Shown: piece by piece, positions 580 to 53,445 of the stretch
Position numbering within the stretch: the first letter of the stretch is position 1
Layout: every line of letters begins with the position of its first letter
Origin: Mytilus trossulus
Lineage: Eukaryota
Reading direction: 5' to 3'
NCBI RefSeq assembly: GCF_036588685.1
Contig: NC_086381.1
Span: 12,462,001-12,526,000 of the forward strand
DNA length: 64,000 nucleotides
Made by a program: the position numbers and the translations under genes
Notes under the pieces: model-generated
What the model saw: the letters and a program-made list of their open reading frames with translations, nothing else
Told to the model about the DNA's origin: nothing
Databases searched by the model: none

Positions 580-1325
580 AAACATGTATACCTTTTCGTA
601 TATTGTGTAGTCAAAAAATGTTTACCTTTTCGAACATTGCGAAGTTAAAAATGTATACATTTTCGTACATTGCAAAGATAAAAATGTGTACCTTTATATA
701 TATTGGAGGTTAAAAATGTATACCTTTTCGTATATTGCGTAGTTAAAAAATTGCAAAGATAAAAATGTGTACCTTTTCATATATTGGAGGTTAAAAATGT
801 ATACCTTTTCATATATTGCGTAGTTAAAAAAATGTATACCTTTTCATATATTGCGAAGTAAAAAATGTATACCTTTTTCATATATTGCGTAGTTAAAAAT
901 CATTTATGTATACCTTTTCATATATTGTGTAGTTAAAAATGTACACCTTTCCATATATTGCGAAGTAAAAAAATGTATACCTTTTTATATATTGCGTAGT
1001 TTAAAATGTATACCTTTTCATATATTGCGAAGTTAAAAATGTATACCTTTTCATATCGGAATTCGATGCGACTGTCATACAAGTGAGAGGTTTAGCGCTA
1101 TAAAACAAGGTTCAATCCACCATTGTCTACATTTGAAAATGCCTGTCCCAAGTCAGGAATATGACAGTTGTTGTCCATTCGTTTGATGTGTTTTGTCATT
1201 TGATTAGGGACTTTCCGTTTTTTCATCGGAGTTCAGTATTTTTGTGATTTTACTTTTTTTCATATATTGCGTACTTATAAATGTATACCTTTCCATTTAT
1301 TGCGTAGTTTAAATGTATACATATT
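580..1325. repeat. ~30-bp minisatellite (aaaaatgtataccttttcatatattgcgtagtt)n interrupted by an insertion at 1057-1256
   Basis: Roughly 15 tandem units before the insertion and 2 after it. Confidence 0.9.
1057..1256 (-). mobile_element. Dispersed SINE-like repeat fragment inserted in the minisatellite
   Basis: Reverse complement of ~24010-24230 (also 20500-20610, 35195-35325); ttttcatat appears on both sides. Confidence 0.7.
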
Positions 1326-3301: not shown

Positions 3302-3652
3302 AACTCGTCATAGATACCAGGATTAAAGTTTGTATTTACGTCAGACGCGCATTTCGTCTATAAAAGACTCATCAGTGACGCTCGAACCCATAAAAGTTAT
3401 AAAGGCCAAGTAACGTACGAAGTTGAAGAGCATTGAGGACTAAAATTCTTAAAAGTTTTACCAAATACAGCTAAGATCAGCTAACGTATTCTATTCTCGA
3501 GGTAGAAAAGCCTTAGTATTTCAAAAAATCAAAGTTTTGTAAGCAGTTGATTTATAAATTTGAGCATATCAATGATAATTCATGTCAGCACAGAAGTGCT
3601 GACTACTGGGCTGGTGATACCTCGGGGAATTAAAAGTCCACCAATGGTGGCA
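3302..3652 (-). mobile_element. Non-LTR retrozyme, second (~370-390 nt) family, near unit length
   Basis: Colinear with 16837-17227 and the reverse complement of 52441-52736. Carries a hammerhead and the ctactgggctggtgatacc-tcgggga block shared with the 350-nt family. Confidence 0.85.
3338..3381 (-). ncRNA. Minimal type I hammerhead ribozyme (intact core)
   Basis: GCGUCA CUGAUGA GUCU-UUUAU-AGAC GAAA U-GCGC-G UC^ UGACGU. Confidence 0.88.
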
Positions 3653-11339: not shown

Positions 11340-11920
11340 TTTGCTCATTTTTAAAAGAGGACTTTTTGCTTTCGAACTGTTTTGATTTAAGCATATGTCA
11401 AATAGCTCTTCAACTGTTCCGTTTCTTAGACATCCGTGCATTTAAAATATTCGGCTTTTAGCGTTCATGATGAAGTTAAATCCAGAAAAGCGCTCATGGC
11501 GCATGAATTTATAAACTGTTGTTTTCATTTTTTCTATATCACTGAGTCGACACCGTTGATTGCGGATTACCAGTCCCCGAGAGTACAATCAGATCAGTAG
11601 TCAGAACTTCTATTGTGACTTAATTGATAACAACCCTTTCTACAATTGTCTGTTTATAAATGTAGAGTCTGAGATTATAGATAAAGTAAAAAATTGTATG
11701 TAGACGATTTCACTATTTCATAAAGACTTTTTTGTCATATTGCTCTTTAAATATTTCGGTTCCTATATATCTGTGGCTTTCAAATAATCGGTGACCGTTC
11801 CTAGTAAAGGGTATTCCGGAAAAGCGGTAAAAACGCATAGAATGTATAACTGTTTATATTTTTTGACGACACATACGTCTGATGTACTAAGTTATTAACT
11901 TGGTATCTTTCATGATAGTT
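11340..11920 (+). mobile_element. Old, decayed retrozyme array of a third hammerhead family (~335-bp spacing)
   Basis: gcgttc-ATGATGA-agttaaatcca-GAAA-agcgct at ~11461, second relic at ~11795, shared cagtccccgagagta...cagtagtcag block at ~11570. Related relics at 4380-4710 and 18320-18420. Confidence 0.55.
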
Positions 11921-12432
11921 TTACTGATTCAAATGGCTGATGGCCGTAATGGCATTCCGGGGTAATGTTTATACAGACATTTCTACCAACGTGACGTGTT
12001 TAACTGATAACAGAACGTATTTTGTAAGACTACGAGAATATTACAGAGTGCAAAATAACATTCCGTATCGCGTGTTATATATACGAATATCTTCAATAAA
12101 TGTTAATGAAAATAATGTTTAAGAACATAGAAAAGTTATATGAAAATGTTAGTCATGAGAAACGTATATATATTAATTTAATGAAAAATCAAAAATAATA
12201 AAATTTGTTTAATTTTGGAGTTAAAAGCAGATATCTGTCGTTTGTGCTTCTTTGTAAAATATTTGTTTGTTTTTATAGTCATAAAGATTATAACACAATG
12301 TTGACTGCTGTATCCCTGTTTGTGACATTTTTAGTTATTTTGTCTGTTTGTTTTTTTAACCCATTATTGTCAAAATAATGGACTTAGATGTGAATGACAA
12401 ACCATTGAGAGGTTTATCTAGCTAATTACCAT

Positions 12433-12558
12433 ACTTTTGATGTGTTTGGTACAACTTTTTTGGAATTTTGGATCCTCAATGCTCTTCAACTTTGTACTTG
12501 TTTGGCTTTATAAATATTTTGATATGATCGTCACTGATGAGTCTTATGCAGACGAAAC
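12433..12558 (+). mobile_element. Retrozyme fragment truncated within the hammerhead
   Basis: cgtcaCTGATGAgtcttatgcagacGAAAc, then unrelated sequence. Confidence 0.7.
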
Positions 12559-15049
12559 TTTCTTCAGTACACCATGCCATTCCACAGTTGAAAGTTTTGC
12601 CAAAATGAAGTCTAATTGGTGTCTATGATCGTTTCCTGATTTCAGGTAGTTGTGAAGCCGAGGGTGAATGGAATTACCTAGTATAAGTGTGTTTAAAGGC
12701 ATGCCTCGATTAAGATATTTTATAAAATTGAGTTTCACCAAATTTCTGTTCGTTCTTCTTTCAGCAGCTATTCAAGGCAACATATTAAAACATGTGCTGG
12801 AAGTAGCACCCCCGTATCAATAACCATATACCTAAAATTTTCAATTCTGCACATAAGAGTGTTTATTTTTGGCCGTTTAATCTATTTATTTATTTTCGAT
12901 TCTTATTTTTTCGTATTTTATTATATTTCAGTGATTTCTGGTTTTCTAATTTAATGCGCATAGAGGTATTTGCAGTATGAGTATTGCCCCTGAAGGTTCA
13001 GAAAAAAGCAATAATTTGTGTTCATAACATGTAAATTTGCATTAGTGTTTTTTTTTATTAGTAATTGCATGAAGCGGATTACTATTTAAATGATAGTCGA
13101 TCAGAGCTCACGTTTTTTTTCTGTTACTATGTACATTTGTACAAATAAAATTAACTAACATATATATAGTTCGTTAATTTTTGTATATTGTATCATTCAA
13201 TTCAACGAGGAGTCAGTTCAATATTAACACTAGTTGATTGCTTATGTGATTTTTTTTAATTTAAAAAATATAGTAAATTAATTGAAATAGTGTCAATAAC
13301 CATAAAAAAAACGAAACATCGATGTCTTTAAAACAAGCCAAATAACTAGCAAGGCTAACACAATTATACAACTTTAGAAATTAAGCAAAAAAGCATTATT
13401 GTTTTACAAAATAGTTCCGCTTTTTCTTGTTTCACGAGAAAAGGGAATAAATAATGCCTAAACAGAAAATAATTAGCTACACGATAATCTGAGCTTTGAT
13501 CTGTCATCAAAGTTATTGCATCATGTTAGATTAAAGTTCACAAGTCAGAGTGAGCAGTTTAGAATTGACACACTTCAATAATGGATCATCTCAAAAATAT
13601 GAATTTTATACTAAGTAGACCAATACCAGCTTTAATAATATTGCATCCAAAACATTTTTTTGTCAAAAATCTCCTTCAGTAAACAATTGATAATAATCTT
13701 GTATCGAGTGTATAATTTGCGTTGAAAATTGTCACTGGTGATCACAGTAGCAATAAATAAACGGAAAATCCATTCTGGAATATTCGTATCATAACATTAT
13801 GAAACTATCAATCAATCAATAAACCATTAAATCCAAGAAACGAACAAGCCCATTCAATTGATTAATGAACGCCAATTGCAGCCAAAAATGATCAATTTTT
13901 TTTTTTACGCAAATAGGCAGATTAGTTTTATTTTGACCTTCCCAAATCACTGCATTTTTTCGTTAAAACACAAGCGTTTTATCTTGCATTGACATGCGTA
14001 CAATATTGTTGGATGCTTTTCATCAGAATGACATATTTTTTAAAAATAAGAAATTGCATGATTTGTGATGTTTCTCAAATTTGTAGAGAACGCGTTTTTT
14101 CGATACTGTATAAATTCATTATTTATTGCAAACAAATAGTGAAAAAGTAACAATTGAAAAATCAAATCCTACCTCTTGTTCCATTCATGAAAATATCATG
14201 AACTCGTAGGGTGTAAAGTTTTAGCCACAAAATTGTGTAAAAAAAAAATGAAAAAAACATCATTTGATTGAAAAAAAATCATACTTCAAATTTGACTTGG
14301 CCTTTTAGTATAATATTTGAAGAGTAAACTAAAGACAAATCATTTCATAACTGTTAATCCACAAACAAGAGTAATAGTATAATTTCTAAAAGACTTTTTA
14401 ACTTCAGATCTAGAGTTGCCGTCCATGTTTTCATAAACAATATTTATTGTTACGTAATAAAAATTGCGTATGCGTACAGAATGCACAAGGACAAATTTGA
14501 ATAGGTAAACAATTAAAGTAGTAGCAATAATTACGTCATCAAATCAAGTTGCGTAATATTTAATAACAATGACCAGTCCATATCAAATAAAGTGTTAAGG
14601 GTTAATTGGGAAGGGGCGACGATATTTTTTTTAACACAATATCTTGTTAGTACTATTAAATATTCACCAACCACACTTGTTGTGAATTATTCAGACACCT
14701 GTATGTATGTATTGGCATCTCTTATAAGGGTATTTAAAGCAAAAGAAAGTTTGGGATTCAAAATCAACAAAATATTGGACTTTATACAGAATATTTACCT
14801 TCTCAAAGCATTGATTTATTAACATATAATACAGGGATACATGAAAATATTTCAAAACATTTCATTCTGGTTTATTTAGAGGTATTACCATGAAATGCGT
14901 TTGAGTGAACAATGGTAGAGCAAACATTGAATCATCTCACAAAATCCTTCAACAGACTATTTGATTTTTTGTATTTCTAAGAAGCAATATTTAAAAAGTT
15001 ATTTTTATGCCGAGTTAATCAATAATTGAATTAATACTAGATTCTCGAC

Positions 15050-16836: not shown

Positions 16837-17227
16837 AACTCATTATAGATACCAGGATTAAATTTTGTATTTACTGCAGACGCGCTTTTCGTCTACAATA
16901 GACTTATCAGTGACGGTCGAATCCAAAAAAAGTTAAAAAGGCCAAATAAAGTACGTAGTTGAAGACCATTGAAGACAAACATTCCTAAAGGTTTTGCCAA
17001 ATACAGCTTAGGTAATCAATTCCTGAGGTAGAAAAGTCTTAGTATTTCAAAAATTCAAAAGTAGTGTTAAAGTTGATTTATTAATATGACCATACCAATG
17101 ATAATTCATGACGGAACAAAAGTGCTGACCACTGGGCTAGTGATACTCCAGGGAATTTTAAAAAACTCCAATAGCAGTGGCATCGACCCAAATGTTGTAA
17201 ATAAACTCATCATAGATAACAGGATTA
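16837..17227 (-). mobile_element. Non-LTR retrozyme, second family, full unit with ~24-bp terminal direct repeat; hammerhead mutated
   Basis: aactcattatagataccaggatta ... aactcatcatagataacaggatta. Hammerhead at ~16873-16916 has CUGAUAA and a broken stem III. Splits a host repeat (gaacagctgtata | tactactgttgc). Confidence 0.8.
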
Positions 17228-20317: not shown

Positions 20318-23117
20318 CTATGACGCAATATAAAAAAGGACATAGATTTTGGGAAAGGACATAGATTTGAGGCAGGACATAGATTTGAGGCTTACATACA
20401 TATATATGATTGGGCTACAGGAGATCGAGTATAGATTAGTAAAGAAATAAAGGAAATATCAATTACCTGCCAGATTAGTAAAAAGTAAAAGAGCAAAACA
20501 AAACAGACCACTATGGAAAAATCAAACCGAAAAGTCCGTTATTAAATGACAAAAGCTCACACACATCAAACGATAAGAAAACAACTGTCATATTCCTGAC
20601 TTGGTACAAAAGAAGGGCAATGCAAGTTGTCACTGTACAAGTTTTATAGTCACCATCGGAAAATGTTAGACCGTTTCGATTTTTCCCAACAGGTTTTCGA
20701 GGTTTCAGAAGTTAATATATCAGAAATGTTATCTGTAAATTAACCGGTTATGTCCATTTCTCTGTGTTATCATTTTAACTTGTCTACCTTTATGCATACA
20801 TGTCAAAAGCAAACCATGGCATAACTGTTTGAAGTTTTGTTTTTTTCAATGCTCTTCAAACTTGATTTGGCTTTCCAACTGTTGATTCGATTAATACAAA
20901 TTATATAAAGCTAATCGTTGAGTAACCTGTGCGTTGCTGCATCCTCGTACGTCATCATGCCATCATAACACAATTAGACCTAATTCTCCTCCACTTAGGA
21001 GAATTGTCTTATGGATGAGTACTTTATTCCGTGCAATCCGCTATGGTTTACAAAAGGCAGTAGTAGATTACTTATGCTTAAATCTCCTTAATAAAATAAG
21101 AAGATACAAAACAAGTTAACGAGAGGAATCGCATAAACTATAAACATAACGATACCAGGTACTTTGACCAGGAAAGCACCTCCTGTTAAGCATGTATCAC
21201 CAGCCCATATGAATCAATACTTAGCCAAAAGGTCACTTGCTATACGACGAATTTGGTTAGAGGCTGTTATTGCGTGTTTTACGATCTAAGACCATGAAAA
21301 CAAATTGCCAGTTTGTTGAGACAAACATGCCTGGCATTGGTCAACCAATGTGTGATGTTGGAGTTAAAACTTATGTTGTATCAATTTCAGTCGTTCTTCA
21401 TAATAACTATGTTGGACTATTTTTCTGTGTCTCAAGGACGTCCTTGCCAATGAAGCGTGAATATGTACGAGCGTAACGTATCAAATGAAATATGTTAACG
21501 CACTGAATGGCGCAAGGAGGAAGTCGATAATTGAAAGCATTACTTTTGTCATAGAACCTAGTTTGAAGTCGTCAATATCGAAGAAAGGATCAAGATAAGT
21601 ACTGATACCTCTTTTTTTAATATATACACATGAAAACATGTTAATAGAGAATAGTATTTTTTTTTAATACTCCATACGTTTCAATACGAAACATTACATT
21701 GTTTGGGGATTAATACGGTTTGTAACATTGAATAAGCCATAGCATATAGATATAAAAAAAAAAAAATTACGGGACTTGAAATTTTATATATTAGAGGTTT
21801 GACAAAGCCTATGGAACCGTGACTGATATCGATAACGTAACGTCATGCAGGATAGGGTTGTGGTTAAGCCTTTGTGGCTGATATCGCTATCATCGTGATC
21901 ACAGAAGGCTGATACAACACGATTGATTGTCATCGAGCGTATTTCACATACAACTTACCTATATTTAGAACTGAATATATGATAACAGATGATATAATAA
22001 AATATAAAGATAAAACTATGAACATGTCTTGCACACATTTTCCGTATCTGCTAAATGGAGGATTGGTTGGGACTAACTTTCAATGTTTGGGTCGGAATTT
22101 ATTGGTCTTCAGCCTTTGTGTTTCGTTTCTTGCACGGCCATAAACTAAATCATTGATTTTCTTGTTTGAACTTTTCATATTTTGTCTTGTTTGAGGCTTT
22201 TGTATCTAACTACGGTTTGTGTGTTTGATCATTGTTAAAGGCAATGCAGTTACGTAAAATTACGTACATCTACTTTATTTGACCTTTGTAAATATGTGTA
22301 TCATTGGCAATCACATTGCACTTCCTTGTTTGTTATTATAGTAAAAATCAATTACAGTTTTAAATAATTTCATTTAAAAGTTTACTACAAGATTTAATAT
22401 TTACATTAAAGAAATCTCTGGTTTGACATTTAACTATAGGCAATAAAAGTTATCATGAGTATTTATTATTCCTATGGCGCATTCAGTATCAGACTTGTTC
22501 CTGATTTATTGCAAATTCCAGTTGAATGTCACCATTTCAGTTTCTCAAGGGAAACTCTATAATACTTAACTAAAGATATATATTTCGTTCCACATAATTT
22601 TACTCATTTAATTTTTATGGTGATGTTGTTTCTGCAGCTTTTTATTTGAGATGGTATCCATATGTAATAATTACCATCGATAAACTGGTTGGCTTAATAA
22701 CATTTAAAGCTTTTGACCTTTTTTGTTTGTTTTCCAAAGTTTTATCATAACTGGGAATGTATTGCTATTCACTTGATACAGCATCATGTGTTTGCTTTGT
22801 ATTAAGACATTGAACAATAAACTAAAATACTTTTCCAAAACAACTCGTCGAGTCCGTTGACGTTCGTTTTTTTTTTTTTTATGTTTTGTCGATTACGAAG
22901 GGAAAGATTCAGTTGAGTTTTGACTTTTAAGTATTTTTTGGTAACTGTCAGTCCTCTTAAGTCTTATTATGTGTGCTTGTTACGATTGTTGAGTGAAGCC
23001 GTTTTTTAAATCATTATTACCAACGCATTCTTTATGTGTGTGTCTGTCGGTTGATGTTAATTGGGCTTTGTCTTAACTATTTTTCGATTGATATTTTTAG
23101 GTTATACCACACCTTAA

Positions 23118-23884: not shown

Positions 23885-24350
23885 AAAAGTAAAATCACAA
23901 AAATATTGAACTCCAATGAAAATTCAAAAAGGAAAGTTCCCAATCAAATGCTCATTATTAACAATCACCAGGAACGTTCAAACACATCGTCATCAGGAAC
24001 GTTTAAATGTAAAATCACAAAAATACCAATTTTCATGGAAAATTCAAAACGGAAAGACCCTAATCAAATGGCAAAATAAAAAGCTCAAACACATCAAATG
24101 AATGGATAACAACTGTCATATTCCTGATTTGGTACAGGCAATTTGTTATGAACAAAATTCTAAATCTAACCTGGTTTAATAGCTACCTACACCTCTCACT
24201 TGTATGACAGTCGCATAAAATTTCATTATATTGACAACGATGTGTGAACAAAACAAACAGACATAATAGGTAAAAATGTCAAAATTGGGGTACAGTAAAT
24301 ATCAGTCAACATTGTGTTATAATCTTAATCACTAAACCCACAAACAAAGT
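23885..24350 (+). mobile_element. Dispersed repeat (aaaagtaaaatcacaaaaatac... family), with the 5' part duplicated
   Basis: Matches the reverse complement of 1057-1256 and 12225-12425. Confidence 0.65.
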
Positions 24351-25756: not shown

Positions 25757-27841
25757 TTACTTTCTATGAGTTGCTGCAAAATAAGCATCTAAAATGTCAG
25801 AATACACATTTTGTATATCTACTGTCTCTGATAAATCCGATTTCTCCGTGAACGTTTTCATGAAATTAGTACAGTTTCCAAACATTACAGTAACCCCAAC
25901 ATATTTGTATTCGGAGTTGATCTGTATTAAAGCCTTCATACCATTCATGTCGATATAGTTCATAGACGAACAGTCGATAATAATATGCGTGAGGGGTACG
26001 ACGGGTATTTCGTTTTCATTGTTTGTTTTTGACAGCGACATTCTTTCATCGTTGTTACCGTTATTTTCGCTTTGATTTATGTTTATTTCAACATTATTTT
26101 CTAAATGTTTGTCTTGTTGTTTTGGAAAGGCTTTTGGATTAAATGTTGCTTTGTACAATTCTTTTACAAATTGATCAGCAGTAGCAAAATAAAGAGATGA
26201 TTCCATTCTAAATATTGCAATTTTTGAATTACATAATGGAATATCATGAGTCTTTTGCTCCAGAAGACGATCCTCTTGCTCAACTTTTCTAATGGTGTAC
26301 GAAGATGAATTCTGACTTTGCACGACAACTGTTAAAAGACAAAGTAGCACTCCAACATACAGGGCGTAAGGGAAATCAATTAGAACACCACACAATACTG
26401 TTCCAACAAAGATAACAAAATCATAACGATTTACTCGCCACAGTTTTGGTAGTTCCTTGAACTGGTATAATAGATTTTTAACAGCTACGATGATCATTAC
26501 TGCAAGTACAGCTTTAGGAGCTGATTCTAAATATTTTCCTATGAACATTATTACAAGCAAGACAAAAATAGCTGATACTATTCCATTCAATGTTGTCTTT
26601 GCACCCATTGTACTTAAGATAACTGTACGTGGTGGTGCAACGCAAGCTGGAAAGCAGGAGAAAAAAGAGCCACCTAAATTTGCAATACCATATGCGACGA
26701 GTTCTTGATTGTCGTCAACTGAATATCCGTGTTTCACCTCACAGAGTCGGGCCATTGAAATCGTAAGCACAAACACAATGAAACCGACAACAACACTATG
26801 TCCTAGTATATCTACCGACACTCGAGGTAGCTCCGGCGTTGGTAGACCAGGAGGTATTTCTCCTACAACACCAATATCGAAGGTGTCGTGTAACTTTGCA
26901 AAATGTGAAATAACTGTTGCTGTTACAACTAAAATTATATCGATTGGTATTGGCATTTTCATTTTGTTTTTGAATCTCTCATTAATGACATCTTTTATCA
27001 ATACAAGTATTATTAAGCATATAACGGAGACTATCAATGTAGCAACATGAATCTTCGGAAATGCTTTGAATATTTCAATATATACATATATCAGTTTTCC
27101 TGGTTTGTTAACAGGTGGAATTTTTATGCCAAGAGCATTAGGGATTTGGCTGGAAATGATATGAATAGCACCGGTTGTGGTAAAAGCCGCAATGAAAGAA
27201 GATGACAGATAAGAAGTAATGAACCCCATTCGGCACAACCCCATGATGAACAGCAGTAATCCAACGATAAAAGACGAACCTGCTGCTACAGACACTTTGT
27301 ACTTTAACACGTCATTATCCATTTCCGGTGAAACTGTTGTTAGGTTACCAACCGTGGAACCGTTAACAGCAGAGTGATGACCAGGCAAATCATACTGTTC
27401 TAACCGTGACTCTACAAGCTCTGCTGTAAAAATTGCAATCACAGCATTTGTTCCGAAAGAAACGTGTTGCGATGTTCCGAAAATCACATACAGGAGAACA
27501 GGAAAAAAGGACGTATACAATCCATAGGCCGGTGATAATGATGCTAATATACCAAATGCAAGTCCTTGTGGAAAATGAAGACAAGCTACAGATAAGCCAC
27601 TTATCAAATCATCTAAGATGTATTTCCTGATCTTATACGTTCTTATTACGTTTATTATTGGGAAAAGTGTTAGTAAATATGCACATAACTTGGAAAGGGT
27701 ACATTTTTTCATGATATTTTCTGAAAATGACTTCGATGGGCTCTTTGGTTTGCCATAAAACTCGTACAATTCAGACTGTGTTTTACGAGATCTTGAAAGC
27801 TGTAAAATATCAGACGACATATCTCCGTTGTTGATACTCAT
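25757..27841 (-). CDS. SLC26/SulP anion transporter, copy 2 (close paralog of copy 1), single coding exon, 694 aa
   Basis: Same motifs, colinear and highly similar to 7314-9365. Homologous acceptor (ttgttatttctatattttAG) at 27878-27877. 3' flank 25390-25560 resembles 7000-7150. Confidence 0.96.
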   Translation of the reverse strand: MSINNGDMSSDILQLSRSRKTQSELYEFYGKPKSPSKSFSENIMKKCTLSKLCAYLLTLFPIINVIRTYKIRKYILDDLISGLSVACLHFPQGLAFGILASLSPAYGLYTSFFPVLLYVIFGTSQHVSFGTNAVIAIFTAELVESRLEQYDLPGHHSAVNGSTVGNLTTVSPEMDNDVLKYKVSVAAGSSFIVGLLLFIMGLCRMGFITSYLSSSFIAAFTTTGAIHIISSQIPNALGIKIPPVNKPGKLIYVYIEIFKAFPKIHVATLIVSVICLIILVLIKDVINERFKNKMKMPIPIDIILVVTATVISHFAKLHDTFDIGVVGEIPPGLPTPELPRVSVDILGHSVVVGFIVFVLTISMARLCEVKHGYSVDDNQELVAYGIANLGGSFFSCFPACVAPPRTVILSTMGAKTTLNGIVSAIFVLLVIMFIGKYLESAPKAVLAVMIIVAVKNLLYQFKELPKLWRVNRYDFVIFVGTVLCGVLIDFPYALYVGVLLCLLTVVVQSQNSSSYTIRKVEQEDRLLEQKTHDIPLCNSKIAIFRMESSLYFATADQFVKELYKATFNPKAFPKQQDKHLENNVEININQSENNGNNDERMSLSKTNNENEIPVVPLTHIIIDCSSMNYIDMNGMKALIQINSEYKYVGVTVMFGNCTNFMKTFTEKSDLSETVDIQNVYSDILDAYFAATHRK

Positions 27842-29783
27842 GATAATTAGAACAGTAAACCAGGATAAATCATTACCTAAAATATAGAAATAACAAATTA
27901 TTCTTCACTGAATATATAGCTTCACCATATAAGGTAATCGAATTTCATGATGTTCTATTCGTATAACACAATCGAAATGTATTCAGGGCATAACTCTTAT
28001 CATACCTATATGCACATCTTCAATTTATCATCTTACCATGAATAATTAAAATTTAATCAGCATTTGATAAACCATGTAAGAAAAGATGCGGCAAAAAAGA
28101 ACATACTGAATACTAGTAGTAGTATGTTCTAAGGTAAAGAGAATAACTCTCATATTTGTTAACAACGCAGTATATCCTTCTTCTTCATGTATGGATCTTA
28201 CAATTTTCAAAGTTCTATATACATTGACGAATAATGTAAACATGTAGAAATAAAACAAACACTAGCTGTCAAACTCTTTTTTTTACCGATTTCATATTTG
28301 ATTATTAACATTCTTAAACGTATATCCAAATGATAAAAAAGTTTTAAATAATCAATAAACAATGTATGAGCTCGATCATATGTATCAACATTTCATGTGA
28401 ATTTAAGTGTAGAGGCCATTAATTAACTCTCGAGGTCAACCCCGAAGACTGCCGACGGTAATATAACCCGGTATATACATATTGTATTTTTCTAGGTATG
28501 TTTGATTTCATATTATACGTTGAAAATATATGTTATTCATCGTTTTTATCTGTAAAATTATGAATTTTTGTGGATCGAATCGAATCAGTCAATCAAATGG
28601 TTTATCCTTGTTTCGCTTTTAATGTCGAGGTCGAATTATTCACCTGCAATTGATTAATTCATCAGTCATGCTTCTTATCTTATTTTGACAAAATTGAACT
28701 AAAAAGGCTGCTAAAAGCGAATTCCTATTTCACTATTTCACTTTCATTATTGATTGATATATTAATTGTCTTATATACGATACCAGAAAGAAATGTTGTT
28801 GATTTTAAGCGCAATGCGTATGGAGAATTATTATGCGAATATCTTATAAATTCGAACTGTTGTATTTTAAATGGAAGAAAAGGTGTCAAAAATAATGATA
28901 CTTATATATCTCAGCTAGGATCTTCTGTAGTGGATTATTGTCTTATTCCATACGAATTACTTGATATATTTGAGCAATGTGACGTCATAACTATGTCGTA
29001 ATTAATCGAAAAACATGATATATTTGAGTATGTTGATCCATCAGTGTCAAAACCTGATCACTCGATGCTTTTGTGGAATGTAAATATAAAGAAATGTGTG
29101 TCGGAAGCATCTAATGATAATGGAAATAATAGTGAATATAATAAGTTTAATGTGAAAAATATTCCAAATTCGTTCTTAACGGATCATTTACGTGATATTG
29201 AAGAGTTAATTTTATCCTTGGAATTGAATAATGTCAACCAAAATAACTTGGATATAGTTTACCAAAATTTTGTTAATCTTTTGAAAAACGAAATGTCGGA
29301 AAAGATGGATTACAAAGTTATAAAAGTGTCATTAAGCTCGAATAATAAAAAACGTCGGATGAAAAACCGTGGTGGTCGGATCATCTCACAAATTTATGGA
29401 ATGATGTATGCGCTATGGAAAAGGAGATGCTGAAAAGTAAATCAGATACTAGGAAACGTCAATGTAGACAAGAATTCATATGTAATCGGAAATTGTTCGA
29501 CCGTGAAACACAACGTTTGAAACGGCGTAACTGGAGAGACCAATTACTAGTTAATAAAATTGACAATTTGGAATCAACAAATCAAACTGAATTTTGGAAA
29601 AAGATCGGACGGGTCGGAGTAGGCGAAGAGAAAAGGAAAGCTATACCTATGTCTGTGCAACTACCGGATGGTAGTATTTCACATGATCGAGACGCTGTAC
29701 TGAATGAATGGAAACGATCTTTCTGTAGTTTGTTGAACCCAGAAGGTAGTATTGATAATAAAATTAACGGTACCAATTTTCTT

Positions 29784-29827
29784 GCACCAGATGCGCATTT
29801 CGACAATACATGTCTCTTCAGTGATGC
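29784..29827 (-). ncRNA. Minimal type I hammerhead ribozyme (intact)
   Basis: GCAUCA CUGAAGA GACA-UGUAU-UGUC GAAA U-GCGC-A UC^ UGGUGC: 6-bp stem I, CUGANGA and GAAA cores, 4-bp stem II, minimal palindromic stem III, AUC cleavage triplet. Confidence 0.92.
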
Positions 29828-30133
29828 TCGTGGCCAAAATATTTGAAATCCAAAGCTTATATAAAAGATGAAGAGCTATAATCCAAAATGTCCAAAAAGT
29901 ATAGCCAAATCCGTGAAAGGAATCAGAGCTTTGCATGAGGGAGATACATTCCTCAATTTATAATAATTTCTAATATTTTTTAACAGCAAATTTTAATAAC
30001 ACAAAAAATCCGTATTTTCATGCCAGTACCGAAGTACTGGCTACTGGGCTGGTGATACCCTCGGGGACTAAAAGTCCACCAGCAGAGGCATCGACACAGT
30101 GGTAGTAATAAAATTAACGGTACCAATTTTCTT

Positions 30134-30175
30134 GCACCAGATGCGCATTTCGACAATACATGTCTCTTCAGTGAT
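30134..30175 (-). ncRNA. Minimal type I hammerhead ribozyme, second copy (stem I shortened by the insertion boundary)
   Basis: Core identical to 29784-29827; stem I is AUCA/UGGU plus a U-G pair. Confidence 0.85.
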
Positions 30176-33100
30176 AACCTTCCAACGGACACAAGTACAG
30201 ATAATGGTGCTACGATGAATTATGACATTACTCATGAGGAAGTTAAACGAGCAGTGATCAGTTTGAAAGTTAACAAAGCTGTTGGTGTAGATGAAATCCC
30301 ATCGGAAGTCCCCAAGAATCCGTGTTTGTTGAACTTCCTACTAAGTTTGTTAAATTAATGTTTCTTCAGTGGTACAATTCCAACTTTCTGGCGGAAAGGA
30401 ATTATTAATCCAATACCTAAGTCGTCGACGTCGAATCCAAAAGACCCAATGTGTTACCGCGGTTTAACACTTGTTCCTGTTTGCTACAAGCTGTACTGTC
30501 ATATATTGAATAACCGATTGCTCGAATGGGAGGAGGAAAATAATATTTTAGATGATTGTCAAAATGGTTTCCGAAAGGGACGGAGTACAATTGATCATAT
30601 AAAGTCATTATCGTCAATTATTGAAACAAGAAAGCTAAAACGTTTGTCGACTTTCACAGCTTTTATAGACTTCCGAAATGCGTATGATGGGATAGACCGT
30701 AATTTGTTATGTCAGAAATTGCTTGATATTGGAATATGCAGGAATATGTATAATGCTATCGTGTCGTTATGTAAGTCAGTAGAATGCTGTGTTCGGATAA
30801 ATGGACAATTAACGGACTGGTTCAATGTTCAGTGTGGTCTAAAACAAGGTTGTTTGCTTTCACCATTACTTTTTAATGTGTATGTGAACGGTCTTGTTAC
30901 GTATATATGTTCATTAAATGCTGGAATAAACATTGACGAGGAAAATGTGTCGATTCTACTGTACGCTGACGACCTTGTATTGCTAGCTGGCTCGGAATCA
31001 GACTTACAGGTTTTGTTACATGGACTTCAGCTCTGGTGTGCGGAGAATGAGATGACAATAAATCATAACAAGTCAAACGTTGTTCATTTCCGACCAAATT
31101 CGACCCCAAGGACAATAAACAGTTTTAAATGTGGCCACCTTGACATAAATGTGGTGGAGAAATATACATACCTAGGTTTAGTGTAAACAGAGCATTTGGA
31201 CTATCAAATTATGGCAAAACACGTAGCAGCATCAGACAACCGTGCCTTGGGACTAGTGATATCTAAATATAAATATTTTGGAGAACTACCGTTTGATTCT
31301 TTCACAAAATTATATGACTCGATTGTTTGGAGTACAATCAGCTACGGAGCGGCAGTGTGGGGAGATAGAACATTTTCATGTATAAATTCGATACAAAATA
31401 AGGCAATTCGTTTTTATATGGGGGTCGGACGGTATACAACTAAAGTAGCAGTGAATGGAGATTCAGCCTGGAAACCACCTTGTGTAAGGCAGTGGCGAAC
31501 TGTTATAAATCATTGGAATCGTTTAAGGTATATGAACACTGATCGACAAAATAAAAGAATCCATAACTGGGCGGAACATAGTTTTCGGCGGTATAAAGCA
31601 TGTAAAAATTCAAATTATAGACTTTATCAGCAGTTTGAATTGTGTAATATTAGTGACTGGTATAATGACACGAACATTCACAAAATCTCCTGCTCAACGT
31701 AGAGCATATTCGCAATTCAGATGTGGGGTTGCACCCATACGAATCGAAACCGGGCGTTTCGAACATTTACCAATGCATGAACGGACTTGCTTTATGTGTG
31801 AAAGTAAAACTGAAACTGAGGAACATGTACTAATTGAATGTCCGATTTATGACGATTTAAGGAACGAACTTTATGAATATATAAACAGTGTAGATGAGAA
31901 CTTTAACATGTTAACGAACCGTGAGAAACTGTCTTTTGTGTTGGGATGTCAAAACGTTAATGTTATTTACAAATGTGCCAAAACCTGCAACTCTATTTTA
32001 GACAGAAGGAGACGTTTTTTTTTATATCGATAACATTTTTTTAGACTGTAAAGTTATTTAAATTTGTTTTAGAAATTTTAATAGTACATGTACATAGTTT
32101 TATAAAGTCCTTTTGTTGTTTGATGAAATTTTACTTTTTGTCTCTCATAATTCTTTTAAGAATAGCATTAATATATATTTATGTTTTTATGATATATGTA
32201 AATATTGTATTGTGTATATTAGTGGTGAGACGTTAATAAACTATCTATCTATGTCATCTATCTATCTATCTTATATATTTCGTAGCCGCTTTAAAAGTAG
32301 ATGTATGCAATTAGAATTGAATTGTGCATACATAAATATTGCACTGTGTTTACTCGGTATTTACTCGGTATTATATCGTTTATTTTGACTTGCAATTCAA
32401 TGGCAAAAGTAGAGAAAACATGTTTGCATTTATATTTGTTTTTATAAAAAAAAAATGATAGATGCAAAAACAGTTTTCGACGACGTGAACACTGGTGTGT
32501 TATCGAATTATACACCATCAACACTTACCCACCGAAATATTTTATAACACGATAGTCACATGGACTGTAAACCAAGTTAACATAAAGACCCAATGCCCAA
32601 AAAATTTGTTGATAAAGTTTGACACGTACACGATCATAAAGAAGTCAAAGAACTTACTATGTTTTAAGTTGTTGGCTCCATTTTCGGCACCTTTGAGTAA
32701 ACTTCTTCCTTAAACAAATATATAGTTTGTTTTTATTATCCAGAGCTTCCGAACCCATATCTGGTTTACAATTTAATCTTGAGATAAAGAATACACTTCC
32801 GGCAGTATAAAGATCAATATTTTAAATATAGCAACAAATGAATAGTGATGAAAGAGAGATTATATGTAATTCTAGCATGTATAGATTAAAATTGAATTAA
32901 ATGCGTGAATTAAATCAATTTTTTATGAGTGTATCTTAGGTTCTTAAAATTTAAAGCTCCGCAAACGTTACGTAAATTCTGTCAAATACTATATATTAAA
33001 AAGTTTCTTTCAAAAAAACTTTAAAGTTGTAGAAAAGTGACCTTTACGTCCTCATTGTAGCGATATTCCACAAGGTTAAGAATAGAATACTAAAAATAAA

Positions 33101-52071: not shown

Positions 52072-53445
52072 ATGTCCAAGATGTACCCAGATGTCGATAT
52101 CGTCGATATCAGTTATGTCGACACGATATCGAATCGATATCGGTGTTTGATTTAAACATCCATGAGAAACCCAGACTTACCAGATGTCAATATATCAGAG
52201 GCAGGGTAATATTCGCTTTTATAAAGACTATATTTGTTCAAAATATGAATACTAGACACAAGTTGAAACTATTTGATTGAATTCAAGAAAATGTAAATAT
52301 TTGTCACTAAATAGATTATTGGCTTTCACACCACATCATCCTATATCTATTTAATACATTATGAAAAAATGATTTATAAAAGAAATTTTAGAAGTACTAC
52401 TTTCTCTTACAGTGTTTATTGAAAAAGGTAAAGGACAGTTCCCAGTAGTCATCACTTCCGTGTTGACTTGAGTTATCATTTAGATGTTCATAATAATAAA
52501 TCAACTGTTAACAAACAAGTTTTTGAAATACTAAGGCTTTTCTACCTCGGAAATAGATTACCTTAGCTGTATTTGGCAAAACTTTTAGGAATGTTTGGTC
52601 CTCAATGCTCTTCAACTTCATACTTTATTTGGCCTTTTAAACATTTGTTGAGTTCGAGTGTCACTGATGATTCTTTTGAAGAAGAAACGCGCGTCTGCAT
52701 AAGTTTAAAATTTGAGTCCAGTATCAATGACGAGTTCTTTTAATAGTAACAGAAATCGCTCGATTACAACAGAGAAGACCCATTAACCTGACAAACATCA
52801 AGTATAAGAATGTTTTTTGGAATAAATATTGTTGAAATTGAAACTTGTTTGAAATGAATAAAAATTATGCATCAAAACAACGCATAACAAGGGAAATTTT
52901 AAATGTCGATATCGACGATATCGACTCTAGTTTATACAAAGTAAAGAATGAATGCTACACATAACAAGGGAAATTTAGATGTTGATATCGATTCGATATG
53001 GACGACATCGACAACACTGATGATAAACAAAGGAGTAATTCGACCAATTTTTGAAATTTTGAAGTACAGAACTTATTTTGAAATGCTTCAACGTGTGATT
53101 ACGATGAAAAATTGAAATGTCGATTCGATGTCGTCGTTATCGTAGATATCGACAAGATTCAGAGTAACCAATGACTAGAGAAATTGGAATGTCGATATCG
53201 AGTCTACATCGTCGATATCGTTCATATCAACACCTACAGATGAACCAATGAGGACAGTTTACTATTATTCATAAAATAGGTAAATAGGGATTTATAGTAG
53301 GTACCTGAACATCGATATCGTCGATATCCACTCATACATTAAACCAGGACAACTGATGAAGTAGATGATTGGGGTGTATACAGTTAAAGTTAATATTGAT
53401 ATCGTTGATATCGTCGATATCGTAACTTCGTCGTGTCTTGGACAT
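52072..53445. mobile_element. ~1.4-kb TIR element with many gtcgatatc subterminal repeats; contains a retrozyme
   Basis: atgtccaaga / tcttggacat ends; clusters of (gt)cgatatc at 52092-52142 and 52905-53422; no clear TSD. Confidence 0.65.
52441..52736 (+). mobile_element. Non-LTR retrozyme, second family, with hammerhead at 52658-52700
   Basis: GUGUCA CUGAUGA UUCU-UUUGA-AGAA GAAA C-GCGC-G UC^ UGCAU; body is the reverse complement of 3302-3620. Confidence 0.82.

What the first reader, a model, noticed from the sequence alone, without database searches (positions are those of the whole stretch)
29757..30175. Retrozyme with two hammerhead ribozymes exactly 350 nt apart, able in principle to release a unit-length (circularisable) RNA
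Seen: a perfect ~70-bp direct repeat whose minus strand folds as a minimal type I hammerhead (stem I GCAUCA/UGGUGC, CUGAAGA, stem II GACA/UGUC, GAAA, palindromic GCGC stem III, AUC^). Predicted cleavage after 30140 and 29790 releases a 350-nt monomer. The insertion has a tgataa duplication and its removal restores the LINE frame, so it is younger than the LINE; identical repeats suggest it is recent. Established: non-LTR retrozymes are tandem repeats with minimal type I hammerheads that yield circRNAs in several animals, including mussels; such hammerheads are related to those of Penelope-like elements and often cleave best as dimers. Inference: the 1.2-unit permuted structure is the footprint of reverse transcription around a circular template.
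Basis: partly seen in the sequence, partly recalled or inferred. Interest (0 to 1): 0.88.

Follow-up and report, generated by a model that had tools for sequence, protein, structure and literature searches.

The report
Truncated mussel hammerhead retrozyme copy
This is one 1.2-unit, 5'-truncated copy of an abundant mussel retrotransposon that carries a self-cleaving hammerhead ribozyme: a known kind of element, whose ends here look like those of a Naiad-type Penelope-like element that may mobilise it.

Summary
A perfect 70-nt direct repeat lies at 29756-29825 and 30106-30175, spaced 350 nt. Its minus strand carries every hammerhead core nucleotide.

This is one copy of a 350-nt repeat family with about 7,500 hammerheads. 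The genome is 1.3 Gb and mussel-like, and holds about 41,000 hammerheads of this geometry. The family is a sister of the published Mytilus Mg353 retrozyme.

Paralogous empty sites prove a precise 419-bp insertion into a decayed RT-bearing element.

- The upstream hammerhead has lost the outer GC of helix I.
- The TGATAA "duplication" could be microhomology.

Across 26 insertions, 24 have a 3' end 32-36 nt past the cleavage site (33 or 34 nt in 18 of them). The 5' ends vary, and lengths run from 1.04 to more than 9.5 units. This is the Penelope-like insertion style.

The junction (3' terminus plus the start of the next unit, about 50 nt in this window's copy) is shared with a Naiad-type element that has intact 1,056-aa frames. 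That element is the likely autonomous partner.

A circular and a multimeric template cannot be told apart here.

The scan already holds 281 notes on such elements in this genome.

The parts
29756..30175 (-). Retrozyme insertion at its largest extent compatible with the element: 1.2 units of a 350-nt repeat, ribozyme-sense on the minus strand. The net extra DNA relative to empty sites is 419 bp.
   Evidence: It is 96-98% identical to other genomic copies. Paralogs L032-L036 lack it.
29784..29827 (-). Complete type I hammerhead. Helix I is GCAUCA (29827-29822) paired with UGGUGC (29789-29784). The core is CUGAAGA, helix II is GACA/UGUC, then GAAA, and helix III is the palindrome UGCGCA. Cleavage is after C29790.
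   Evidence: covariation across three families: 93.6% of cells paired, 7 of 14 pairs changed on both sides. Dimer fold.
30134..30177 (-). Upstream hammerhead, truncated in helix I. The 5' strand reads UUAUCA instead of GCAUCA. The core and helices II and III are intact. Cleavage is predicted after C30140.
   Evidence: The copy starts at about unit position 316-320.
29756..29789 (-). 3' tail: 34 nt between the cleavage site and the insertion's 3' boundary, ending in ..GUUAAUUUUAUUA. This is the inferred start site of reverse transcription.
   Evidence: 24 of 26 independent insertions end at unit position 33-37. Naiad copies end in a similar ..UUUUACUUUUUA.
30054..30105 (-). Block shared with the Naiad 5' leader. 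It starts with CUACCACUGUGUCGAUG directly after the internal 3'-boundary position (30106). It contains the bulged hairpin GAUGCC..GGACU-UUU-AGUCC..GGUAUC (30092-30054).
   Evidence: local alignment score 44 against a shuffle mean of 15.4 and maximum of 28; z 12.9; 16 of 21 anchored matches, P about 2e-5.
30023..30040 (-). UUCG-capped 7-bp hairpin CCAGUAC-UUCG-GUACUGG, conserved between retrozyme families A and B.
   Evidence: three of its pairs are changed on both sides between families and stay paired.
29753..29758 (+). Left TGATAA: target-site duplication or microhomology. TAA overlaps the element's terminal UUA.
   Evidence: Empty-site paralogs hold a single TGATAA.
30172..30177 (+). Right TGATAA: target-site duplication or microhomology. 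TGAT overlaps the element's AUCA of helix I.
28750..32388 (+). Host: a decayed RT-bearing (LINE-like) element with several stops and frameshifts. The RVT_1 domain is at 30449-31183. Its frame runs across the insertion site.
   Evidence: RVT_1 E 1.2e-32; seven genomic paralogs, 69-95% identical.

Best explanation
The feature is a 5'-truncated, 1.2-unit copy of a non-autonomous non-LTR retrozyme, here called family B. The unit is 350 nt. Its type I hammerhead has a helix III that is a 6-8-nt palindrome and most likely forms between two ribozymes.

Shown:
- The copy was inserted precisely into an older RT-bearing element.
- It belongs to a family with about 7,500 hammerheads in this genome.
- In the family the ribozyme-sense strand has a fixed 3' end about 34 nt past the cleavage site, a variable 5' end, and 1.04 to more than 9.5 units per insertion.
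- The 3' terminus, together with roughly the next 50 nt (about 70 nt in the Naiad, which has a hairpin inserted there), is shared with a Naiad-type Penelope-like element.

Inferred life cycle:
1. Arrays are transcribed.
2. Hammerheads, probably paired as double hammerheads, cut out 350-nt monomers.
3. An RtcB-type ligase circularises them.
4. A Penelope-like reverse transcriptase and GIY-YIG nuclease, most likely Naiad, starts cDNA on nicked target DNA at the U-rich site just upstream of the shared leader.
5. It copies a circle or an uncleaved multimer for a variable distance.

In this copy synthesis started at ..UUAUUA (29756), crossed two intact cleavage sites, and stopped in helix I of the second hammerhead. 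It was joined through short microhomology. The copy itself is probably a dead-on-arrival by-product rather than a significant RNA source.
For: - The repeat and ribozyme motif are present.
- Motif excess: 5 against 0.05 in the window, 41,211 against 6 in the genome, and 7,490 against 0 for this family's hammerhead.
- Covariation of the three helices across families A, B and C: 93.6% paired, and 0 of 500 shuffles reach the covariation score.
- The dimer fold forms the 8-bp helix III.
- Empty-site paralogs read ..ATTGATAACCTT.. uninterrupted, and the host frame continues across the site.
- Family architecture: 24 of 26 insertions end at unit position 33-37, while 5' ends are scattered from 1 to 343.
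- Units within an array are 97.9% identical, against 95.7% between arrays.
- Two to three of 26 insertions have their 5' end exactly at the cleavage site (P about 4e-4 to 3e-3).
- The Naiad is identified by N-terminal GIY-YIG, a CxC motif and DKA (with criteria from PMC8557442). More than 20 loci have an open 1,056-aa frame, and tandem spacing is about 4,277 bp.
- Dispersed 5'-truncated Naiad copies end at ..ACUUUUUA. Full copies continue with CUACAACCAAGUCGAUG..CUGCUGGUGGAUUUUUCCCCGAGGGCAUCA. The retrozyme has ..UUUUAUUA followed by CUACCACUGUGUCGAUG..CUGCUGGUGGACUUUUAGUCCCCGAGGGUAUCA.
- The published sister family Mg353 has the same ribozyme geometry. It self-cleaves, is circularised by RtcB, and is seen as circRNA in mussel tissues (PMC7229834).
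Against: - There is no RNA evidence for this copy or this family.
- Rfam models do not score the motif.
- The monomer fold is no better than shuffles.
- Target-site duplications in the family do not differ from mismatched-flank controls (mean 4.9 against 4.4 nt), so the nuclease signature is unclear.
- Similarity to Naiad is limited to about 55 aligned nt plus a short U-rich terminus.
- The stem shared by Naiad and the retrozyme shows only one-sided changes, not compensatory ones. The Naiad leader's lowest-energy fold does not form that stem.
- Naiads are reported to lack hammerheads (PMC8557442).
Confidence: 0.8

Rival explanations
1. One reading: the template was a closed 350-nt circular RNA, and the 1.2 units arose by rolling-circle reverse transcription round it.
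For: - The cDNA crosses two intact cleavage-site junctions and starts 34 nt downstream of one. A cleaved linear monomer therefore cannot be the template.
- Insertions of 1.04 to more than 9.5 units share one start site.
- Units within arrays are more alike than units between arrays.
- CircRNAs dominate over linear forms for the sister family (PMC7229834).
Against: - An uncleaved multimeric transcript gives the same product. Cleavage of the sister ribozyme is slow (k_obs about 0.1 per min), so multimers should exist.
- Units within arrays are not identical (97.9%).
- Insertions whose 5' end sits exactly at the cleavage site (L003, L013) fit run-off on a linear RNA with a cleaved 5' end.
Confidence: 0.45
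2. The family is a SINE-like passenger of a LINE, not of a Penelope-like element.
For: - A fixed 3' end, 5' truncation and junction microhomology are also hallmarks of LINE-type target-primed reverse transcription.
- The element sits in a LINE-rich region.
Against: - Head-to-tail multimers are typical of Penelope-like elements, not of SINEs (PMC8557442).
- The terminus and leader match a Naiad.
- There is no poly(A) or microsatellite tail.
- The host LINE shows no similarity to the element.
Confidence: 0.1
3. The feature is a satellite-DNA fragment placed by a DNA-level process, such as unequal exchange, gene conversion or integration of extrachromosomal circular DNA, with no RNA intermediate.
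For: Large tandem arrays of the unit exist, for example about 5.6 kb at two places about 34 kb apart on C9. Arrays can grow by unequal crossover.
Against: - The insertion is precise, at a site that is empty in five paralogs.
- Hundreds of dispersed short copies share one polar end.
- Integration of a circular DNA would give randomly permuted ends.
Confidence: 0.03
4. The hammerhead-like motif is inactive or fortuitous, and the repeat is an ordinary non-coding repeat.
For: - Rfam is negative.
- The monomer fold z-score is +0.69.
- Helix III is only 2 bp in cis.
Against: - All invariant core nucleotides are present.
- The motif occurs 41,211 times against 6 for the control.
- Compensatory changes occur in all three helices, including ones that keep the helix III palindrome: UGCGCA, CGCGCG, UCCGGA.
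- The sister ribozyme with the same geometry cleaves in vitro (PMC7229834).
Confidence: 0.03

Closest known systems
Mytilus galloprovincialis non-LTR retrozyme Mg353 (Cervera and de la Pena 2020, PMC7229834)
   Same: - A tandem unit of about 350 nt and low GC (37% here).
- A type I hammerhead with identical geometry: 4-bp helix II with a 5-nt loop, and a 6-nt palindromic helix III.
- A conserved block ..GAUGCC.CUGCUGGUGGA....CCCCGAGGGUAUCACCAGCCCAGUAG.. and a UUCG hairpin.
- The published ribozyme string occurs verbatim and abundantly in this genome.
   Different: - The ribozyme sequence differs: CUGAAGA-GACA/UGUC-UGCGCA here against CUGAUGA-GUCU/AGAC-CGCGCG.
- The units are about 72% identical over 300 nt.
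- Family B's RNA, cleavage and circularisation have not been tested.
- The paper's two ribozyme consensuses are described as essentially the same sequence, so family B may not be among them.
Naiad clade of Penelope-like elements (Craig et al. 2021, PMC8557442)
   Same: - 5' truncation, head-to-tail partial tandems and a fixed 3' terminus.
- A 0-3-nt run-on into the next unit (CUA/CU).
- A shared terminus and 5' leader sequence.
   Different: - The retrozyme encodes no protein and carries a hammerhead. Naiads are reported to lack canonical hammerheads.
- The Naiad preference for (TA)n targets is not seen in the 26 flanks.
Minimal type I hammerheads of canonical Penelope-like elements, and dimeric hammerheads of newt satellite 2 and axolotl retrozymes
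   Same: Helix III is very short in cis, with a palindromic loop that allows a double hammerhead. A Penelope-like-element ribozyme of this kind is present in L057.
   Different: Helices I and II are longer here than in the minimal Penelope-like-element variants. Dependence on a dimer is predicted only from folding, not measured.
Non-autonomous Chlamys elements such as MRC1 (PMC8557442), and Xenopus retrozymes related to the pseudo-LTRs of Penelope-like elements (bioRxiv 10.64898/2026.07.22.740005)
   Same: Non-coding, multicopy head-to-tail insertions that share terminal sequence with an autonomous Penelope-like element.
   Different: - The hosts differ (green alga, frog) and so do the clades (Chlamys, Neptune/Poseidon).
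- The preprint states that invertebrates were not examined.
Plant LTR retrozymes
   Same: Hammerhead-flanked unit, circRNA intermediate, non-autonomous.
   Different: They have type III ribozymes, LTR/PBS/PPT, Gypsy machinery, 4-bp duplications and high GC.

Membership tests
Hammerhead ribozyme, type I | Invariant core CUGANGA ... GAAA ... UH^ in the order helix I 5' strand, core, helix II hairpin, GAAA, helix III, cleavage site, helix I 3' strand. | tested here: met
   Both copies read CUGAAGA / GAAA / AUC^.
Hammerhead ribozyme, type I | Three helices supported by covariation. | tested here: met
   93.6% of cells paired, 7 of 14 pairs changed on both sides, and slid controls collapse. Only three families were sampled.
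Hammerhead ribozyme, type I | Score above the Rfam gathering threshold for a hammerhead model. | tested here: not met
   no hammerhead hit even at E<=10. All five motifs in the window are missed, including the type proven active in the literature, so this reflects the model's reach.
Hammerhead ribozyme, type I | Self-cleavage at the predicted site. | not testable with these tools
   Indirect only. Two to three of 26 insertions have their 5' end exactly at the site. The sister ribozyme cleaves in vitro (PMC7229834).
Metazoan non-LTR retrozyme | Head-to-tail repeats of 170-400 bp, from dimers to large multimers, each with a type I hammerhead. | tested here: met
   The period is 350 bp and arrays run from 1.04 to more than 9.5 units and longer. 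This copy has 1.2 units.
Metazoan non-LTR retrozyme | Low GC; no LTR, PBS or PPT; no coding capacity. | tested here: met
   GC is 37.4%. Only chance ORFs occur in the unit. The only terminal redundancy is the unit itself.
Metazoan non-LTR retrozyme | Expressed as linear and circular monomer RNA. | not testable with these tools
Shown only for the sister family in the literature.
Non-autonomous partner of a Naiad Penelope-like element | Penelope-like insertion style: fixed 3' end, frequent 5' truncation, partial tandems. | tested here: met
Non-autonomous partner of a Naiad Penelope-like element | Terminal sequence shared with the autonomous element. | tested here: met
   z 12.9; 16 of 21 anchored matches. 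The Naiad identity of the partner is shown.
Non-autonomous partner of a Naiad Penelope-like element | Conserved RNA structure in the shared module. | tested here: inconclusive
   Between retrozyme families A and B, 4 pairs are compensatory. Between Naiad and the retrozyme there are only one-sided changes, and the Naiad lowest-energy fold differs.
Non-autonomous partner of a Naiad Penelope-like element | Mobilisation in trans by the Naiad protein. | not testable with these tools
   Needs a retrotransposition assay.

The most novel reading that the evidence does not exclude
Mussel hammerhead retrozymes are parasites of the hammerhead-less Naiad Penelope-like elements. The start of reverse transcription would be set by a composite module: a U-rich 3' terminus followed directly by the leader hairpin. 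That module is contiguous only in circular or multimeric RNA. This would explain why these elements and their partners insert as head-to-tail multimers. It would also make the insertions whose 5' ends lie at the ribozyme site a genomic fossil of in vivo self-cleavage.
Probability: 0.4. Interest if true: 0.6.

Novelty: new member of a known kind. Interest (0 to 1): 0.3.

Why it matters
The copy itself is ordinary. It is one of thousands of retrozyme insertions in a mussel-like genome, and mussel retrozymes and their circRNAs were described in 2020.

The value lies at the family level:
- The polar architecture (a fixed 3' end 34 nt past the ribozyme site) and the junction shared with Naiad give a concrete, testable candidate for the long-sought autonomous partner of animal retrozymes in an invertebrate.
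- They also give a defined start site for reverse transcription that requires a circular or uncleaved template.

The papers I could search propose Penelope-like elements as partners in general. They show sequence relatedness only for Xenopus.

Tried and rejected
- **Rfam.** Gathering score over the whole window and E<=10 over 751 nt gave no hammerhead. I take this as limited model reach, not as absence.
- **Monomer fold z-score.** Uninformative.
- **Genome letters.** A second family search returned coordinates but no loci. The census of ends stays at 26 insertions, and 3' regions of canonical Penelope-like elements could not be surveyed.
- **Hammerheads near GIY-YIG loci.** A scan of 30 loci found only neighbouring retrozymes and one minimal Penelope-like-element ribozyme. 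No canonical Penelope-like element shared this family's ribozyme.
- **Target-site duplications.** Not distinguishable from mismatched-flank controls.
- **Mixed Naiad and retrozyme alignment.** The MAFFT alignment was out of register in the hairpin. Only the 5 basal pairs could be counted, and they show no compensatory change.
- **Conservation among 67 units.** The ribozyme and leader vary only slightly less than the rest (0.020 against 0.028-0.040 minor-allele fraction, alignment). This is too weak to argue selection.
- **Host endonuclease.** Pfam on ORFs upstream of the host RT found no endonuclease. "LINE" therefore rests on RVT_1 and on the absence of LTR features.
Full report
**1. The observation**

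The window holds a perfect 70-nt direct repeat at 29756-29825 and 30106-30175, spaced 350 nt start to start. On the minus strand each copy reads ..AUCA CUGAAGA GACA UGUAU UGUC GAAA UGCGCA UC UGGUGC... This is the order of a type I hammerhead: helix I 5' strand, CUGANGA, helix II hairpin, GAAA, helix III, UH cleavage site, helix I 3' strand.

Cleavage after C30140 and C29790 would release the 350 nt from 30139 to 29790.

The motif is not chance:
- A generic pattern of this geometry occurs 5 times in the window against 0.05 expected.
- It occurs 41,211 times in the 1.3-Gb genome against 6 for the reversed control.
- This family's own ribozyme sequence occurs 7,490 times against 0.

Three points need correcting:
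- The outer GC of helix I lies outside the repeat. The downstream ribozyme (29784-29827) has GCAUCA/UGGUGC. The upstream one (30134-30177) has UUAUCA, which gives four pairs plus a U.G.
- Rfam reports no hammerhead at gathering score or at E<=10.
- The isolated 53-nt fold is no better than shuffles.

**2. Is it a hammerhead?**

Three ribozyme families of the same geometry are visible in this genome:

| Family | Sequence | Period |
|---|---|---|
| A | CUGAUGA-GUCU..AGAC-GAAA-CGCGCG-UC | 354 nt |
| B (this one) | CUGAAGA-GACA..UGUC-GAAA-UGCGCA-UC | 350 nt |
| C | CUGAAGA-GACA..UGUC-GAAA-UCCGGA-UA | 573 nt |

On an alignment of eight copies, the three helices are 93.6% paired. Seven of 14 pairs are changed on both sides, no shuffle out of 500 reaches the covariation score, and slid controls collapse.

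Helix III stays a palindrome through double changes. In cis it can form only two pairs closing a 4-nt loop. Two ribozymes together form an 8-bp helix III, and the dimer fold is -30.3 kcal/mol against 2 x -9.3.

Family A's ribozyme string is the one in the published, experimentally cleaving Mytilus construct Mg353 (PMC7229834 supplement). That also indicates a Mytilus-like genome.

**3. Insertion into an older element**

The flanks belong to a decayed RT-bearing element on the plus strand, with RVT_1 at 30449-31183 (E 1.2e-32).

Its frame reads ..LNPEGSIDN up to the insertion and continues LPTDTSTDNGATMNYDITHEEVKRAVISLKVNKAVGVDEIPSEV after it.

Five paralogs elsewhere in the genome run uninterrupted through ..GTAGTATTGATAACCTTCCAACGG.. 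with a single TGATAA. The extra 419 bp are therefore a precise, later insertion.

TGATAA is present on both sides. However, its TAA also matches the element's terminal UUA, and its TGAT matches the AUCA of helix I. The real duplication can be anything from 0 to 6 bp.

Across 21 family insertions, duplications are no longer than in mismatched-flank controls.

**4. The family and its polarity**

The unit has more than 778 candidate places at 94-98% identity. These range from 1.04-unit copies to arrays that run beyond the 3.3-kb loci and multi-kb arrays.

In ribozyme-sense orientation:
- 24 of 26 independent insertions end at unit position 33-37. That is 32-36 nt past the cleavage site (33 or 34 nt in 18 of the 24), in ..GUUAAUUUUAUUA, sometimes with C or CU added.
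- 5' ends are scattered between positions 1 and 343.

This is the signature of reverse transcription from a fixed start with variable termination. The window copy is an ordinary example: it starts at 29756, covers 1.2 units, and ends in helix I.

The start lies downstream of a cleavage site and the cDNA crosses cleavage sites. A cleaved linear monomer therefore cannot be the template. It must be a circle or an uncleaved multimer, and the data do not decide between them.
- Units within an array are more alike (97.9%) than units between arrays (95.7%), but they are not identical.
- In L003 and L013 (and within one nt in L011), the 5' end is exactly the first nucleotide after the cleavage site. 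The probability is about 4e-4 to 3e-3 for 26 events. This small-sample hint suggests that ribozyme-cut 5' ends existed in vivo.

**5. A candidate autonomous partner**

GIY-YIG loci are numerous. One family has the nuclease N-terminal (aa 183-273), a CxC motif (LTCDCS) and DKA in place of DKG. These are the diagnostic Naiad features of Craig et al. 2021 (PMC8557442). More than 20 loci have an open 1,056-aa frame, and tandem copies lie about 4,277 bp apart.

The termini compare as follows:
- Dispersed 5'-truncated fragments of this Naiad all end at ..GUGAUUUUACUUUUUA, some with CUA added.
- In full or tandem copies the next bases are CUACAACCAAGUCGAUG, then a 21-nt hairpin, then CUGCUGGUGGAUUUUUCCCCGAGGGCAUCA, followed by the ORF.
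- The retrozyme reads ..GUUAAUUUUAUUA followed by CUACCACUGUGUCGAUGCCUCUGCUGGUGGACUUUUAGUCCCCGAGGGUAUCA.

The 33-nt block scores 44 against a shuffle mean of 15.4 and a maximum of 28 in 2,000 shuffles (z 12.9). The 21 nt anchored at the boundary match at 16 positions (P about 2e-5). The match lies on the same strand as the Naiad ORF.

Between retrozyme families A and B, this block and a following UUCG hairpin show four compensatory pairs. Between Naiad and the retrozyme, the basal stem changes only on one side, and the Naiad leader's lowest-energy fold differs. Shared sequence is therefore solid; shared RNA structure is not.

The papers I could search name Penelope-like elements as likely partners in general (PMC7229834). 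They show relatedness only in Xenopus, and state that invertebrates were not examined (bioRxiv 10.64898/2026.07.22.740005). No paper found links mussel retrozymes to Naiads.

**6. What could not be done**

This limited the census to 26 insertions and prevented a survey of the 3' ends of canonical Penelope-like elements.

**7. Verdict**

The copy is a truncated by-product of a very abundant, already described kind of element. It belongs to a sister family of the published one. The scan already holds 281 notes on such elements in this genome.

The circle-footprint inference is possible but not shown. The family-level link to Naiad is the only part that goes beyond the literature I could read, and it needs a wider census and an assay.

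Noticed in passing
window 25757-27841 (-): An uninterrupted 694-aa ORF with Sulfate_transp (E 4e-103) and STAS domains: an SLC26/SulP-type transporter as a single exon in an animal genome.
   Followed up: partly
window 3344-3375 (-), 12534-12565 (+), 52664-52695 (+): Three further hammerhead motifs of the family A (Mg353-like) type, two of them degenerate. Rfam at gathering score reports none of the five in the window.
   Followed up: partly
window 24005-24329 (-), 1058-1258 (+), 20476-20608 (-), 12241-12424 (+): 5'-truncated 3' ends of the Naiad-type element. Three stop at the same ..UUUUACUUUUUA-type terminus. The one at 12241-12424 lies about 110 nt upstream of a family A hammerhead.
   Followed up: partly
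window 11524-11610 (+), 17105-17205 (-): 70-72% matches to the retrozyme leader block, unit positions about 24-124. They may be further families that carry the same module.
   Followed up: no
L003:1501-1884, L013:802-1885: Retrozyme insertions whose 5' end is exactly the first base after the ribozyme cleavage site. In both, about 14 nt of unexplained sequence lie between the element's 3' end and the second copy of a putative target duplication.
   Followed up: partly
L068:981-5151 and L068:5217-5964: A 441-bp tandem array (about 9.5 units, 96-97% identical) lies next to a family C hammerhead element that has a 575-bp direct-repeat period.
   Followed up: no
L057 (oriented, about 720-765): A minimal Penelope-like-element-type hammerhead (CUGAUGA, 5-bp helix II, GAAA, GCGC loop, UA) lies 280 nt upstream of a truncated Penelope-like ORF with a C-terminal nuclease.
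   Followed up: no
G000 C9:78119138-78124737 and C9:78153237-78158836: Two family B arrays of about 5.6 kb, 34 kb apart, with identical score patterns, suggesting a segmental duplication that contains a retrozyme array.
   Followed up: no
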